Below are positions 60,612 through 63,349 of a DNA stretch of 64,000 bases, piece after piece; the stretch's first letter is position 1; every line of letters begins with the position of its first letter. The DNA comes from Mobula birostris. Its lineage: Eukaryota. Under the pieces are notes generated by a model. The model was not told where the DNA came from. It searched no databases and saw only the letters and a list, made by a program, of their open reading frames with translations. Location: positions 20,189,309 through 20,253,308 of the forward strand of contig NC_092379.1 of NCBI RefSeq assembly GCF_030028105.1. Reading direction: 5' to 3'. Position numbers and translations under genes: made by a program.

Positions 60612-60925
60612 GAGGATATTTGTCCGTTAACTGAGGGATATCTGTCCACTGACGGGTATCTCTCAGCCCCTGTCTCTCAGGGAGTTATCTCTCGTGTCTT
60701 TCTGCCCGCCTCTCTGGTGAATATCTGGATATATGTTGAAAGACTGGTATCTTTCAGTCCATCTCTCAGGGGGATATCTGTCCACTGACTGGTTTCTCTC
60801 AGTGAGATACCTTTCCACTAACTAATGTCTTGCCGTCTCTGTCTGTAAAGGGTATATCTGTCCACTGACCGGTGTCTCTCGATCGCTATCTACAGAGGGA
60901 TACCTGTGAACTGGCTAGTGTTTCT
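60612..60925 (+). repeat. Dispersed degenerate repeat GGATATCTGTCCACTGAC upstream of the V promoter
   Basis: Near-perfect copies at 60636, 60772, 60852; weaker copies at ~60614, ~60804, ~60898. Confidence 0.75.
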
Positions 60926-61184
60926 CATTGTCCCTCGCTGGGATTCTGTGTGTTTCAGTTTACACAAACTGTTCATCGCTGAAATTGTTGAATCGAGCAG
61001 AGTGTGACAGATCTTTAATCCGGATCTGGTCACTGCCACTGACCTGCCACCTGTTTCAGAGACAAACATCTTTTGGGGAATTGAAAGCGCTGCTGTGGGT
61101 GGGGACAGGAAGCTGCGCCTCTGGTTTCAGTGTGTGAGAGCCTGTTCAAACCGCGGCTCCCTCTCTCACTCACAGCCCACGTCC

Positions 61185-61193
61185 CTATTTAAA
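61185..61193 (+). promoter_or_regulatory. TATA-like box of the V1 promoter
   Basis: CTATTTAAA about 90 nt upstream of the leader ATG (61282); no octamer seen nearby. Confidence 0.5.
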
Positions 61194-61281
61194 CAGAGCT
61201 CACTGCGGCTCCGGACAAAGCCGGCCTGAGCTGAAGTCGCCGATCTCAAAATTGTCCAAGTCTGGCTCAGTGTTCAGGGCG

Positions 61282-61327
61282 ATGGGGGTCGTTCCTTATC
61301 TCTGTCTCCTCCTGTCTTGTCTGGCAG
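61282..61327 (+). CDS. IGHV: IgW-type VH leader exon (V1): [15 protein letters not shown](G)
   Basis: 46-nt hydrophobic leader exon, phase-1 GT donor at 61328, polypyrimidine/AG acceptor at 61435-61436. Confidence 0.92.
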
Positions 61328-61436
61328 GTGGGTGTCCCGCGGCTTGTCGCCCTCCCGGGACCGGCTGTTTCTCGGAGGCTTTGTGAACCTCTGCCCGTGG
61401 AACATTTTATTAATTTCTGCTCTTTTTTATTGACAG

Positions 61437-61780
61437 GCGTGCGGTCCGACATCGTGCTGACACAGCCCGGGTCAGCGGTGGTAAAGCCCGGGCAGTCCCA
61501 CAGACTGACCTGTGCGGTCAGTGGGTTCGACATCAGCAGCCGCTACATGTACTGGGTGAAACAGGTCCCCGGGAAAAAGATGGAGCGGTTGGTAACGTAT
61601 TATAGTGAAAGTTACAAGGATTACGCGCCTGGAGTCCAGAGCCGCTTCACCGCTTCCAAGGGCGGCAGCAACTTTTATCTGCAAATGAACAACCTGAGAC
61701 TGGACGACACGGCCACCTACTACTGTGTGAAAGGCTGCTATTACGACGAGTGGGGTACTATACAGAGTTACTATAGGTGG
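61437..61780 (+). CDS. IGHV: IgW-type VH exon (V1), open, apparently germline-joined to D sequence: [11 protein letters not shown]...LTC...W...YYC-VKGCYYDEWGTIQSYYRW
   Basis: Canonical FR1 Cys, FR2 Trp and DTATYYC; DIVLTQP...HRLTCAVSGF and WVKQVPGK resemble cartilaginous-fish IgW V; 18 codons after the second Cys before the heptamer. Confidence 0.9.
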
Positions 61781-61819
61781 CACAGTGTGAGAGATGGCGG
61801 CTCCCTCCATATACAAACC
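61781..61819 (+). other. 23-RSS after V1-D
   Basis: CACAGTG + 23-nt spacer + ATACAAACC; spacer identical to that of the D at 62867. Confidence 0.9.
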
Positions 61820-61885
61820 TACCGCACAAAACTCTTTAAATTGGGCTCTTCGGGCCGCTCCACCGGCCTTTATCCGAAAGTCAGC

Positions 61886-62016
61886 CTGACGAAGGGTCTC
61901 GGCCTGAAACATCGACTGTACCTCTTCCTAGAGATGCTGCCTGGCCTGCTGCGTTCACCAGCCACTTTGATGTGTGTTGCTTGAATTTCCAGCATCTGCA
62001 GAATTCCTGTTGTTTG
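61886..62016 (+). mobile_element. Penelope-type terminal-repeat insertion with hammerhead core, replacing the 5' half of V2
   Basis: CTGACGA-AGGGTCTCGGCCT-GAAAC-ATC-GACTG...GATGCTGCCTGGCCTGCTG...CAGCATCTGCAG; left junction shares GCCTGA with the native flank. Confidence 0.8.
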
Positions 62017-62180
62017 AGCTACTACATGAGCTGGGTGAAACAGGTCCCGGGAAAGGGCTGGAGTGGCTGGCGGCTATATCGGGTGGTGGTAGCAAGTATT
62101 ACGCGCCTGGAGTCCAGAGCCGGTTCACCGCTCCTAAGGAGAGCAGCAACTTTTATCTGCAAGTGAACAACCTGCGAGTG
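62017..62180 (+). pseudogene. IGHV: IgW-type V2 pseudogene (CDR1 to mid-FR3)
   Basis: [10 protein letters not shown], -1 frameshift (CCCGGG vs CCCCGGG), [25 protein letters not shown]...LQVNNLR; lacks DTAxYYC and V-RSS. Confidence 0.9.
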
Positions 62181-62195
62181 TCTGAGAGGGGCGGA

Positions 62196-62279
62196 GGTTA
62201 TCGTACGGCGGTGTATCACTGTGACTGTGCTATGGGATGGCACAGTGTGAAAGATGGCAGCTCCCTCCATACAAAAACC
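62196..62279 (+). other. IGHD: D segment ACTGTGCTATGGGATGG (62224-62240) with 5' 12-RSS and 3' 23-RSS
   Basis: GGTTATCGT-12-CACTGTG | D | CACAGTG-23-ACAAAAACC (consensus nonamer). Confidence 0.92.
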
Positions 62280-62402
62280 TACCGCACAAAACTCTTGGAA
62301 TTGGGCTTTTCGGACGCTTCCACCGGCCTTTACTCCGAAAGCCGGCCTGAGCTGAAGCCGCTAATCTCAACAGCGTCCGAGTCCGGCTCAGTGCTCAGGG
62401 CG

Positions 62403-62820
62403 ATGGGGGTCATTACTCACCTGTCTCCTCCTGTCTTGTCTGGCAGGTGGGTGTCCCGCGGCTTGTCGCCCTCCCGAGACCGGCTGTTTCTCGGAGGCTT
62501 TGTGAATCTCTGCCCGTGGAACATTTTATTAATTTCTGCTATTTTTTTTATTGATAGGCGTGCGGTCCGACATCGTGCTGACACAGCCCGAGTCAGCGGT
62601 AGCAAAGCCCGGAGACTCGCACAGACCGTCCTGTGCAGTCAGTGGGTTCGATATCAACAACTACTACATGAGCTGGGTGAAACAGGTCCCGGGAAAGGGC
62701 TGGGGTGGTTGGTTGCGTATAGAATAGAAACGTACATGTACTTCGCGCCTGGAGTCCAGAGCCGATTCACCGCTTCCAAGGAGAGCAGCAGCTTTTATCT
62801 GCAAATGAGCAACCTGAGAG
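62403..62820 (+). pseudogene. IGHV: IgW-type V3 pseudogene (leader 62403-62446, V exon from 62558)
   Basis: Leader is 44 nt (2-nt deletion); same -1 FR2 frameshift and same FR3 truncation as V2. Confidence 0.9.
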
Positions 62821-62838
62821 GGTTGTGAGAGGGGCAGA

Positions 62839-62919
62839 GGTTATCGTACGGCGGTGTATCACTGTGACTATACTGGGTGGCACAGTGTGAGAGATGGCGG
62901 CTCCCTCCATACACAAACC
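62839..62919 (+). other. IGHD: D segment ACTATACTGGGTGG (62867-62880) with 5' 12-RSS and 3' 23-RSS
   Basis: GGTTATCGT-12-CACTGTG | D | CACAGTG-23-ACACAAACC. Confidence 0.92.
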
Positions 62920-63254
62920 TACCGCAACAAAACACCTTAAATCGGGCTCTTCGGTCGTTTCCACCGGCCTTTACCCCGGGATCCGTGGATATAAATCAGA
63001 CCCCGAGTGGATAATCTGGGAGTGGGTACAAGTTCCACTGGAGATGTGTCCGGAAGGGAACGGGACCACCGAGGAGGAGCTGTCAGTGGAAGCCCAGTGA
63101 AAGGTCCCGCTGGGTTATATCACCTCCACTTCAGGACTGGGATGGCAGAGATTGAGACCCGCTGTGTGGGACACCCGGACACAGGGGGAGGTTTTAATAA
63201 ATCCGCTGGCCGGTTCTGGGATCCACTGGATTTCAGGCTGGATTTGATGAAGAC

Positions 63255-63282
63255 GGTTTGTGACGTGTGGTGAAGCACTGTG
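63255..63282 (+). other. 12-RSS preceding the (D)J segment
   Basis: GGTTTGTGA + 12-nt spacer CGTGTGGTGAAG + CACTGTG. Confidence 0.8.
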
Positions 63283-63349
63283 TCTGGCCTATCGAACTGT
63301 GACAATTATATGTACTGCGGCGGAGGAACCTCGCTGACAGTGACTTCAG
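63283..63349 (+). CDS. IGHJ: (D-)JH segment SGLSNCDNYMYCGGGTSLTVTS with phase-1 splice donor
   Basis: xGxGT...LTVTS J motif with Cys at the Trp position; G|GTAAG donor at 63350; 48-nt J core 63302-63349. Confidence 0.85.

What the first reader, a model, noticed from the sequence alone, without database searches (positions are those of the whole stretch)
61200..62990. Cluster built from three tandem V-D modules: dead Vs serve as carriers of extra D segments
Seen: the unit [GCCGGCCTGAGCTGAAG upstream flank, leader, intron, V, D, 23-RSS, ACCGCA..AAA flank] recurs three times. V2 and V3 share the same -1 frameshift in FR2 and the same FR3 deletion, with TGAGAG microhomology, that removes the V end and V-RSS and abuts the D 12-RSS. 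They therefore duplicated after inactivation, yet both Ds keep intact 12/23 RSSs. Established: cartilaginous-fish IgH clusters normally have a single V. Inference: the functional layout is VD-D-D-(D)J, and tandem duplication of V-D modules is a route to raising D number and CDR3 length.
Basis: partly seen in the sequence, partly recalled or inferred. Interest (0 to 1): 0.72.

Follow-up and report, generated by a model that had tools for sequence, protein, structure and literature searches.

The report
Triplicated V-D modules in ray IgW
One antibody heavy-chain (IgW) gene cluster of this ray carries three tandem copies of a V-plus-D unit, of which only the first V is alive, so the cluster has two spare D segments that still look usable; this layout is real and unusual, but nothing yet shows that the spare Ds end up in antibodies.

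Summary
The tandem V-D structure is real, but the middle unit is not a full copy. Its upstream flank, leader, intron, FR1 and CDR1 are replaced by a 133-bp young interspersed repeat.

- **Layout:** V~D1~D1 (germline-joined, 23-RSS), then psiV2 with 12-D1b-23, then psiV3 with 12-D1c-23, then 12-(D2~J).
- **Dead Vs:** psiV2 and psiV3 share a -1 frameshift in FR2 and the same FR3-to-D1-flank deletion. The duplicated unit starts downstream of the only TATA box, so the extra Vs never had a promoter.
- **Distribution:** these marks occur genome-wide only here and in an inverted paralogue 130 kb away.
- **Not an artefact:** the copies differ by about 11%. Exact contigs from other samples cover the diagnostic junctions, and contigs from a related species cover two of them.
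- **RSSs:** all are near consensus and fit the 12/23 rule, so VDD-(D)-(D)-DJ joining is possible.
- **RNA:** it shows the unrearranged cluster transcribed from the V1 promoter. I saw no cluster-specific rearranged product.
- **Doubts about function:** J has Trp-to-Cys, V1 has altered FR2, and CH1 is dead.

The extra Vs are passengers, not carriers by design. As far as I looked, the scan has not noted this layout on other DNA.

The parts
61186..61193 (+). TATA-like box (TATTTAAA), the only one in the cluster; it lies upstream of module 1 only
   Evidence: RNA depth is zero upstream and rises in bin 61121-61227
61217..61880 (+). Module 1: 5'UTR, leader, intron, V1~D, 23-RSS and 3' flank, ending in junction motif CCGAAAG (61874-61880)
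61282..61327 (+). V1 leader exon (46 nt, intact)
   Evidence: splice joint from 61327
61437..61780 (+). V1 exon with open frame, germline-joined to D1-like sequence (CDR3 starts at 61727; at least two D1-like patches); FR2 reads GKKMERL instead of GKGLEWL
   Evidence: Pfam V-set E = 2.3e-16
61781..61819 (+). 23-RSS after V1~D: heptamer CACAGTG, 23-nt spacer, nonamer ATACAAACC (7/9)
   Evidence: read directly
61884..62016 (.). Fragment of a young high-copy interspersed repeat; it replaces the 5'UTR, leader, intron, FR1 and CDR1 of module 2
   Evidence: 941 first-look candidates; listed copies 96-99% identical; very high depth in all runs
62017..62182 (+). psiV2: CDR1 end, FR2 (-1 frameshift at 62045), CDR2 (conversion-like patch 62071-62106) and FR3 truncated at the shared junction
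62196..62223 (+). 12-RSS of D1b: nonamer GGTTATCGT (7/9), 12-nt spacer, heptamer CACTGTG
62224..62240 (+). D1b coding, 17 nt, open in all three frames, Cys in two of them; its motif CTATGGGATG is otherwise found only in the CDR3 of paralogue B's V1
62241..62279 (+). 23-RSS of D1b: CACAGTG, 23-nt spacer, ACAAAAACC (9/9)
62338..62975 (+). Module 3: 5'UTR without TATA, leader, intron, psiV3, D1c with both RSSs and 3' flank that runs on into canonical D1-D2 spacer; junction motif CCGAAAG at 62335-62341
62403..62446 (+). psiV3 leader exon with a 2-nt deletion (44 nt against 46), shared with paralogue B's psiV
62558..62825 (+). psiV3 exon: -1 frameshift at 62687, in-frame stops, FR3 truncated and fused to the D1 upstream flank; no V-RSS
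62839..62866 (+). 12-RSS of D1c (identical to that of D1b)
62867..62880 (+). D1c coding, 14 nt, identical to the D1 of canonical cluster L003
62881..62919 (+). 23-RSS of D1c: CACAGTG, 23-nt spacer, ACACAAACC (8/9)
63255..63282 (+). D2-type 12-RSS: GGTTTGTGA (7/9), 12-nt spacer, CACTGTG
63283..63349 (+). Germline-joined D2~J coding, in frame to the splice donor; the J motif reads CGGGT (TGC at 63316-63318) instead of WGGGT
   Evidence: J exon end confirmed by loose ends at 63349

Best explanation
This is a genuine IgW-type heavy-chain minicluster. Earlier scan notes, which I did not verify, call the host a manta or devil ray.

**How it arose (inferred).** A segment of about 1.1 kb was duplicated in tandem. 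It ran from roughly the transcription start, through leader, intron, V and D1, to about 90 bp beyond the D1 23-RSS. One non-homologous junction formed (CCGAAAG followed by CCGGCCTGAGC) and was then copied again, giving three modules. Because the unit begins downstream of the only TATA box, the extra Vs were silent from the start. The second V lost a base in FR2. It also lost its FR3 end, its RSS and the V-D1 spacer by a microhomology deletion, before that module was duplicated. In module 1, RAG activity in the germline fused V to D1 sequence, and D2 was fused to J. A transposable element later removed the front of module 2.

**What it is now (shown).** The layout is V~D1~D1(23-RSS), psiV2 with 12-D1b-23, psiV3 with 12-D1c-23, then 12-(D2~J). 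Every RSS is near consensus and every pairing obeys the 12/23 rule.

**How it would work (inferred).** The V1 23-RSS can join any of the three downstream 12-RSSs by deletion, and each D can join the next. One to three joins would give VDD-DJ, VDD-D-DJ or VDD-D-D-DJ. The dead Vs are thrown out with the excised DNA. They are passengers of the duplication, not functional carriers.

The cluster is transcriptionally open in unrearranged form. I judge it about even odds that the spare Ds appear in somatic joins. It is less likely than not (about 35%) that the cluster makes a working chain.
For: **Anatomy and repeats:**

**Canonical family layout:** V-23, 12-D1-23, 12-D2-12, 23-J, against which the deletions and fusions are defined.

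**Single origin, then amplification:** the junction motif, the FR2 frameshift and the FR3/D1 junction occur genome-wide only in this cluster and in paralogue B.

**No promoter for the extra Vs:** there is no TATA box upstream of module 3.

**Extra lesion:** psiV3 and B's psiV share a 2-nt leader deletion.

**Repeat fragment in module 2:**

**Not an artefact:**
- Units 2 and 3 differ at 25 of 233 sites outside CDR2.
- Clusters A and B are 90-94% identical over several kb.
- A DNA contig from another sample (X4) bridges 62337/62338 and another bridges 62825/62826, both with no mismatch. X4 and X2 contigs also cover 62182/62183 with 30 nt on the short side.
- Contigs from related species X9, with 3-5 mismatches, cover the 61880 and 62337 junctions (29-30 nt on the short side), and X9 keeps the frameshift.

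**RSS competence:**
- B's V1 carries a longer CDR3 with D1-like patches (k = 6 coverage 36 of 83 nt against 4.9 expected, p < 0.0002).
- That CDR3 includes the D1b-specific 10-mer. B's RSS flank bears the unit-2-specific CTTGGAATTGGG. Among the 33 cluster front ends I fetched, both motifs occur only in unit 2 of A and in B.
- B's remaining psiV has its D1 12-RSS fused to the D2~J coding sequence.
- Together this is what two germline deletional joins on a three-module ancestor would leave.

**Transcription:** RNA-like runs X1 and X2 show splice joints and no depth upstream of the promoter (X1 zero, X2 low). They contain exact contigs over intergenic parts (62033-62212, 62197-62409, 62675-62835, 63148-63282) at depths of about 200-560.

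**Isotype:** V-set plus five intact C1-set exons and a secretory tail lie downstream.
Against: - No rearranged transcript or signal joint specific to this cluster was seen. Only 15 of 68 joints were displayed, and all of those fit other clusters' conserved FR3 and J ends.
- RSS conservation in unit 2 is not significantly above background (p = 0.15).
- The link from unit 1 through the repeat to unit 2 rests on the assembly, plus one related-species contig that reaches only 27 nt into the repeat.
- The second join in B (D1c to D2~J) would need 12-14 nt of trimming on each side, so it could be a plain deletion.
- Signs compatible with decay: J Trp118 to Cys, V1 FR2 changes, a CH1 exon with an early stop and a SINE, and V1 dN/dS of 0.56 against B on only 18 differences.
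Confidence: 0.68

Rival explanations
1. Inert fossil. The cluster is a decaying pseudogene front end. The spare Ds and their RSSs look intact only because the whole D1 region is kept alike across clusters, or has not had time to decay. They are never used somatically.
For: - J reads CGGGT. V1 FR2 has lost the GLEW motif. The CH1 exon has a stop in codon 4 and a SINE.
- Most sister clusters in this genome are germline-joined or broken.
- The RSS elements are not significantly more conserved than their flanks.
- No cluster-specific rearranged RNA was seen.
- The D1 region and its downstream spacer are about 94% identical across clusters anyway.
Against: - The V1 frame, the D2~J frame and CH2-CH6 are all open.
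- The promoter is active and the unrearranged cluster is transcribed.
- All six RSSs have consensus heptamers.
- Sister clusters with the same dead CH1 are strongly expressed with J spliced to CH2, so a dead CH1 is not in itself proof of a dead gene.
- The layout is retained in a related species.
Confidence: 0.3
2. Adaptive multi-D device. The extra D modules are kept because they lengthen CDR3 and add cysteines in a CH1-less, light-chain-free IgW, as three Ds do in IgNAR.
For: - The germline parts alone give a CDR3 of about 29 residues, and up to about 40 with both spare Ds (read).
- Cys codons lie in the V1 CDR3, in D2~J and in two frames of D1b.
- The V1 changes fall at VH/VL interface positions 44, 45 and 47, and at J position 118.
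- CH1 is dead while CH2-CH6 are intact.
- Clusters L010 and L036 have a camelid-like ERE motif in FR2 and are expressed without CH1.
Against: - No protein and no rearranged RNA from this cluster.
- No detectable selection on the RSSs or on V1.
- Only one cluster pair in the genome has the layout, and the paralogue has lost it by germline joining.
- The HCAb-like clusters L010 and L036 manage with the ordinary V-D1-D2-J layout.
Confidence: 0.17
3. Assembly artefact. The triplication comes from collapsed or mis-joined reads of different clusters.
For: The region holds a high-copy repeat and many paralogous V genes, where assemblers often err. No displayed contig bridges the repeat to unit 2.
Against: - The copies differ by 6-27%, not near zero.
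- The diagnostic junctions and the frameshift are unique to this cluster and paralogue B.
- Exact contigs from other samples bridge or cover the unit 2/3 junction and both FR3/D1 junctions. Related-species contigs cover the unit 1/repeat and unit 2/3 junctions.
- Paralogue B independently preserves the module junction and the psiV.
Confidence: 0.02
4. Gene-conversion donors. The dead, promoter-less, RSS-less Vs act as sequence donors for V1, as the pseudo-V(D) genes of the chicken do.
For: - psiV2 and psiV3 lack a promoter and a V-RSS, like chicken pseudo-V genes.
- A CDR2 patch in psiV2 (22 of 36 differences from psiV3, resembling another V subfamily) shows that conversion-like exchange does act here.
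Against: - The pseudo-Vs lie downstream of V1 and are deleted from the chromosome by the very join that assembles V1.
- They carry frameshifts.
- As far as I know, gene conversion is not a known diversification route in cartilaginous fish.
- The patch went into a pseudogene, not out of one.
Confidence: 0.03

Closest known systems
Cartilaginous-fish IgH minicluster (V, D1, D2, J, C), including partly germline-joined forms (VD-J, VD-DJ, VDD-J, VDDJ)
   Same: - Same gene family and same genome neighbourhood: dozens of clusters on one chromosome.
- Leader, intron and V; RSS-flanked Ds; one J; IgW-type constant exons.
- Germline RAG-type fusions of V to D and of D to J (PMC5192425, PMC4279169, PMC2193156).
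   Different: - Reviews describe one V per cluster and 1-3 Ds. Here there are three V copies.
- The extra Ds are duplicates of D1 that arrived with V copies, not a D3 of separate type.
- All remaining RSS pairs are of the 12/23 'any-to-any' type, so the Ds are optional.
Coelacanth IgH/IgW locus with closely linked VH-D pairs
   Same: V and D are repeated together as a unit upstream of J and C. PMC5192425 states that the IgW1 locus has 14 closely linked VH and D segments. That each VH is followed by a nearby D is my recollection of Amemiya et al. 1993 PNAS, which I did not check here.
   Different: - In coelacanth the Vs are functional, and many V-D pairs feed many Js in a translocon-like locus.
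- Here only the first V is alive, there are three units inside a 2-kb minicluster, and there is a single pre-joined DJ.
IgNAR cluster (V, D1, D2, D3, J) and other heavy-chain-only antibody genes
   Same: - More than two Ds joined in series, giving long, Cys-rich CDR3s (PMC5192425).
- No CH1-type light-chain docking: CH1 is dead here.
- From memory, a holocephalan heavy-chain-only IgM was also reported to have a special CDR3-generating layout (Anumukonda et al. 2022; the paper is not held).
   Different: - IgNAR has a single V of a different V family and three distinct Ds. It is a proven protein.
- This cluster has a VH-type V, duplicated D1s carried on dead V copies, and no evidence of protein.
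Chicken pseudo-VH genes fused to D (gene-conversion donors)
   Same: V pseudogenes with no promoter and no V-RSS, joined to D-region sequence and lying beside one functional V (from memory: Reynaud et al. 1989 Cell).
   Different: - Chicken pseudo-Vs lie upstream, are fused to D coding without RSSs, and act by conversion.
- Here they lie downstream, are frameshifted and are fused to the D's 12-RSS flank. The D keeps both RSSs, and they are excised on rearrangement.

Membership tests
IgW-type heavy-chain minicluster of cartilaginous fish | Split leader/V exon encoding an Ig V-set domain behind a promoter | tested here: met
   V1 has an open frame and matches Pfam V-set at E = 2.3e-16. A TATA-like box lies at 61186. 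RNA depth begins there.
IgW-type heavy-chain minicluster of cartilaginous fish | D and J segments flanked by heptamer-spacer-nonamer RSSs that obey the 12/23 rule | tested here: met
   Six RSSs were read directly. Their heptamers are CACAGTG or CACTGTG, their spacers 12 or 23 nt, and their nonamers match at 7-9 of 9.
IgW-type heavy-chain minicluster of cartilaginous fish | Six C1-set constant exons plus a secretory tail downstream of J (IgM has four) | tested here: met
   CH2-CH6 are open and match C1-set at E = 4e-8 to 1e-20. The tail ends in the usual PTLVNVSLV-type motif. CH1 is present but dead. The isotype name rests on exon count and layout, because no named homologue could be retrieved.
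IgW-type heavy-chain minicluster of cartilaginous fish | A single V segment per cluster | tested here: not met
   There are three V copies in 1.8 kb. This is the departure that makes it a variant.
Germline-joined (RAG-rearranged in germ cells) Ig gene | Coding segments fused with loss of exactly the two facing RSSs and the DNA between them, while the outer RSS is kept | tested here: met
   V1~D1 keeps only the D1 23-RSS. D2~J keeps only the D2 5' 12-RSS. The psiV/D1 fusions do not meet this test, because the 12-RSS and 27 nt of its flank are kept. They are plain deletions.
Coelacanth-type tandem (VH-D)n organisation | Repeated units, each with a functional V followed by its own RSS-flanked D | tested here: not met
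   Only V1 is functional, and its own D is already fused. psiV2 and psiV3 are frameshifted, promoter-less and RSS-less. The resemblance is in layout only.
Heavy-chain-only antibody locus (IgNAR-like or camelid-like) | Transcripts and protein that lack CH1 and light chain; a V domain that is soluble alone | not testable with these tools
   CH1 is dead and sister clusters splice J to CH2. For this cluster no spliced or rearranged RNA could be assigned, and no protein data exist.
Somatically used D segments | D sequence found between V and J in rearranged products | tested here: inconclusive
Germline use is inferred from paralogue B.

The most novel reading that the evidence does not exclude
Repeated rounds of V-D module duplication followed by RAG joining work as a germline 'accordion' that builds very long, cysteine-bearing CDR3s. 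In this ray it would feed a CH1-less, light-chain-free IgW lineage. The spare D1b and D1c would then be used somatically to give CDR3s of 30-40 residues, a third independent route (after IgNAR and camelid VHH) to single-domain antibodies with D-rich loops.
Probability: 0.15. Interest if true: 0.8.

Novelty: new variant of a known kind. Interest (0 to 1): 0.45.

Why it matters
Shark and ray antibody genes are the textbook case of 'one V, a few Ds, one J' miniclusters. How D number changes, for example how IgNAR came to have three Ds, is not known. This cluster shows one concrete route. A V-D unit is duplicated, the extra V dies, and the extra D stays flanked by good RSSs.

The paralogue 130 kb away appears to record the recombinase using those Ds in the germline. 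That gives a before-and-after pair within one genome.

The layout also echoes the V-D pairs of the coelacanth, which have been read as a bridge between cluster and translocon loci. The cluster belongs to a subfamily with a dead CH1 whose sisters are expressed without CH1. If it proves productive, it would bear on how light-chain-free antibodies gain long CDR3s.

As it stands, this is a well-documented structural oddity of one cluster pair with no proven output.

Tried and rejected
- **The look-up of sequencing runs** failed five times as busy before it answered.
- It showed only 15 of 68 joints and 24 of 381 loose ends, so cluster-specific rearrangements could not be searched. The displayed V-to-J joints (61725-61729 to 63312-63319) have 20-26-nt sides in conserved FR3 and J and belong to other clusters. 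The J-to-CH2 loose end is the exact CH2 start of clusters L017 and L018, not of this cluster.
- **The search for homologous proteins** with V1 gave nothing, so rearranged products could not be found by protein and no named homologue fixes the isotype or species.
- **Papers not held:** PMC9590256 (heavy-chain-only genes in holocephalans) and PMC4110200 (coelacanth Ig).
- **Test for constraint on the unit-2 RSSs:** not significant (p = 0.15).
- **dN/dS of V1 against B:** 0.56 on 18 differences, uninformative.
- **psiV/D1 fusion as a RAG product:** considered and rejected. A coding joint or a hybrid joint would not leave the nonamer, spacer and heptamer plus 27 nt of upstream flank in native orientation.
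- **D1 12-RSS as the V's own FR3 end** (the 'TAVYHC' reading): considered and rejected. The same 12-RSS and flank lie about 380 bp downstream of intact Vs in canonical clusters, and the reading is out of frame with psiV. The 14/19 resemblance remains unexplained.
- **Retrocopy origin of the modules:** rejected, because the intron is kept.
Full report
**What is at the coordinates.** Reading 60.6-64.0 kb, a repeat search and a three-way alignment show a tandem structure.
- Module 1 (61217-61880) has a 5'UTR, a 46-nt leader (ATG at 61282), an intron, and a V exon (61437-61780). The V exon runs without any V-RSS into D-like sequence and ends at a 23-RSS (61781-61819).
- Module 3 (62338-62975) repeats the 5'UTR, leader, intron and V, then a D with a 12-RSS and a 23-RSS.
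- Between them lies a partial module (62017-62337). It starts in CDR1 and has the same D arrangement.
- Downstream, a D2-type 12-RSS (63255-63282) directly precedes a D~J coding stretch (63283-63349) with a splice donor.

**The family background.** The window is contig 12:20189309-20253308 of a 4.0-Gb genome. A DNA search of the genome finds dozens of related clusters between 18.4 and 24.3 Mb on that contig. I fetched 33 cluster front ends and classified them.
- The unjoined layout (L003, L007, L010, L036) is V with a 23-RSS, D1 with 12- and 23-RSSs, D2 with 12-RSSs on both sides, and J with a 23-RSS. The spacers between segments are about 350-400 bp.
- Most clusters are germline-joined VDD-J. 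One is V-DD-J, one is a fully joined VDJ, and one carries an inversion.
- Downstream of this window's J lie a CH1 exon, five further C1-set exons with open frames and a secretory tail, and then a second CH3/CH4-like pair. This is the IgW pattern.
- Earlier notes of this scan call the host a manta or devil ray. I did not verify that.

- The shared -1 frameshift in FR2 is real. The 27-mer that carries it occurs three times in the genome: twice here and once in paralogue B.
- The shared FR3 truncation is real. Both dead Vs stop after 'AACCTG(A/C)GAG' and continue with the sequence that in canonical clusters lies 27 nt upstream of the D1 nonamer. This removes the FR3 end, the V 23-RSS and the V-D1 spacer. 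The breakpoint fits microhomology between CTGAGAC in FR3 and CTGGGAGAC upstream of D1.
- Both spare Ds keep good RSSs.
- The statement that the whole unit recurs three times is not correct for the present sequence. In unit 2 the part from 5'UTR to CDR1 is replaced by a 133-bp piece (61884-62016) of a high-copy repeat that is 96-99% identical to copies on many chromosomes. That points to a recent event.
- The novel junction motif CCGAAAG at 61874-61880, identical to that at 62335-62341, shows that a full third unit once began there.
The leader of psiV3 has a 2-nt deletion. The duplicated unit starts about 25 bp downstream of the only TATA-like box (61186), so no TATA box lies before module 3.

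**Real or artefact.**
- The copies are old. Units 2 and 3 differ at 25 of 233 sites outside CDR2, and CDR2 itself differs at 22 of 36 sites in a conversion-like patch. In a V tree, psiV2 groups with another V subfamily for that reason.
- The module junction, the frameshift and the FR3/D1 junction are found only here and in a paralogous cluster B at contig 12:20116942-20118260 on the other strand. B shares 90-94% identity with this cluster from 2.5 kb upstream of V to 3 kb beyond J.
- X4 and X2 contigs also cover 62182/62183, with 30 nt on the short side.
- Runs X1, X2, X4 and X9 all differ from the window at several positions, so they are not simply the assembled individual.
- Contigs from a second species (X9; 3-5 mismatches per about 100 nt) cover the unit 1/repeat junction and the unit 2/3 junction, with 29-30 nt on the short side. 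X9 also keeps the frameshift at 62687.
- No displayed contig bridges the repeat to unit 2.
- I regard an assembly artefact as excluded for practical purposes.

**The paralogue as a natural experiment.** B has the following layout:
- a V1 with the same start of CDR3 as here, but a longer D-rich tail, then a 23-RSS;
- then the module junction;
- then one psiV with the same frameshift, the same leader deletion and the same FR3/D1 junction;
- a D1-type 12-RSS on that psiV which abuts the D2~J coding sequence shared with this cluster.

D1-derived 6-mers cover 21 of 55 nt of this window's V1 CDR3 (2.9 expected, p = 0.0014). They cover 36 of 83 nt of B's (4.9 expected, p < 0.0002). So both Vs are fused to more than one D1.

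The extra tail in B contains the 10-mer CTATGGGATG. The flank after B's RSS contains CTTGGAATTGGG. Among all fetched front ends, both motifs occur only in unit 2 of this window and in B. B's flank is also closest to unit 2: 92/101 identities, against 86/102 for unit 1 and 87/102 for unit 3.

This is what a germline deletional join of V~DD to D1b would leave: loss of the unit-1 23-RSS, psiV2 and the D1b 12-RSS. The 12-RSS-to-DJ fusion is what a D1c-to-D2~J join with heavy trimming would leave, although a plain deletion is also possible.

I therefore infer that the common ancestor had three modules, and that both spare Ds have served as recombination substrates in germ cells. Germline RAG activity in cartilaginous fish is established (PMC2193156).

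**Expression.** X1 and X2 behave as RNA.
- They show leader-intron and J splice joints.
- Exon depth is about a thousand times the intergenic depth.
- X1 has no depth upstream of 61121, and X2 has little.
- They contain exact contigs over intergenic parts of this cluster (62033-62212, 62197-62409, 62675-62835, 63148-63282) at depths of about 200-560.

So the unrearranged cluster is transcribed from the V1 promoter through the dead Vs, the Ds and J. Sterile transcripts of unrearranged shark Ig genes are known (PMC5192425).

The V-to-J joints that were shown have short sides in conserved FR3 and J, and carry CDR3s that are not V1's. The loose end after J is the exact CH2 start of clusters L017 and L018. 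Nothing could be assigned to a rearranged copy of this cluster.

**Is the cluster alive?**
- In favour: the frames of V1, D2~J and CH2-CH6 are open, all RSSs are good, and the promoter is active.
- Against, or ambiguous: J reads CGGGT instead of WGGGT. V1 FR2 reads GKKMERL where B and the canonical Vs read GKGLEWL.
- The CH1 exon has a stop in its fourth codon and a tRNA-type SINE. Both are identical in clusters L017 and L018.
- The Vs of those two clusters (L010, L036) carry a camelid-like SEREC motif in FR2, and they are expressed with CH1 skipped.
- The changes in this cluster fall on VH/VL interface positions. That fits either adaptation to life without a light chain, or relaxed constraint after CH1 loss.
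- dN/dS of V1 against B (0.56 on 18 differences) cannot decide between them.

**Mechanism and rivals.** With the 12/23 rule, the V1 23-RSS can join the 12-RSS of D1b, D1c or D2~J. Each D's 23-RSS can join any 12-RSS downstream. One to three deletional joins would give CDR3s of about 29 to 40 residues. The dead Vs have no RSS or promoter and are excised, so they are passengers.

I give:
- 0.68 to this reading (a real, recombination-competent module triplication with passenger Vs);
- 0.30 to the view that the Ds are never used somatically;
- 0.17 to an adaptive long-CDR3 role;
- 0.03 to a gene-conversion donor role;
- 0.02 to an artefact.

The first three overlap in their structural part.

**Comparison with what is known.** Reviews state one V, 1-3 Ds and one J per cartilaginous-fish cluster (PMC4279169, PMC5192425). 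I found no report of tandem V-D modules within such a cluster, and no paper on Mobula Ig loci.
- The closest layout is the coelacanth locus with closely linked VH and D segments (PMC5192425). There, however, the Vs are functional.
- IgNAR shows what three serial Ds can do.
- Chicken pseudo-V(D) genes share the lack of promoter and RSS, but work differently.

I class the finding as a new variant of a known kind.

**Limits.** The host name, the coelacanth 'D after each VH' detail, the chicken comparison and the holocephalan heavy-chain-only paper rest on earlier notes or on memory, not on tests made here. Only one read-laying run was available, and it used contigs, not raw reads.

Noticed in passing
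L013:5324-5905 (5.3-5.9 kb beyond the window end); L017:5623 and L018:5666: The CH1 exon of this cluster has a TAG in codon 4 and a tRNA-type SINE of about 245 bp. The same dead exon is present, identical over the first 110 nt, in the clusters at 22.79 and 22.08 Mb. The canonical cluster L015 has an intact CH1.
   Followed up: partly
L010:821-1112 and L036:658-949 (contig 12 at 22.077 and 22.786 Mb): The V genes of the two other dead-CH1 clusters read WAKQVSGSERECLAA in FR2, a camelid-VHH-like E-R-E motif. RNA runs X1 and X2 show J spliced to the exact CH2 start of these clusters, so CH1 is skipped.
   Followed up: partly
L005 (contig 12:21846885-21850421), about 21847960-21848385: V~D1 coding is followed by an inverted D2 5' 12-RSS and an inverted D1-D2 spacer. 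This looks like a germline hybrid-joint or inversional RAG product.
   Followed up: no
window 62071-62106: CDR2 of psiV2 differs from psiV3 at 22 of 36 positions while the flanking FR2 and FR3 differ by 4-10%. It resembles the 'SGGGSKYY' V subfamily of other clusters. This is a conversion-like patch laid into a pseudogene.
   Followed up: partly
window 62205-62223 and 62848-62866; also L003, L007, L010, L036: The spacer plus heptamer of the D1 12-RSS matches the FR3 end of V (the 'TAxYYC' codons) at 14 of 19 positions in every cluster that has D1. It is out of frame with the dead Vs. It may be chance or a very old relic, and it is not explained.
   Followed up: partly
L023, L024, L026, L027, L028, L030 (contig 12 at 18.6-19.75 Mb), L040, L041 (unplaced contigs): At least eight VDD-J clusters have V sequences identical over the 161-nt stretch compared (CDR1 end to FR3), with the same compensated frameshift in FR1. 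This looks like a recent segmental amplification of one cluster.
   Followed up: no
L004:2440-2500 (contig 12 at 21.09 Mb); L032 (contig 12 at 20.61 Mb): Another J has lost the Trp and reads LGGGT. L032 is a fully germline-joined VDJ with frameshifts.
   Followed up: no
L014 and L019 (contig 12:20100001-20119999): Paralogue B has no CH1 or CH2 within 17 kb of its J. The nearest CH2-like match is 36 kb downstream and only 80% identical.
   Followed up: partly
window 60635-60937: A minisatellite of six 41-nt units (63-80% identical to the reference copy) lies upstream of the V1 promoter.
   Followed up: no
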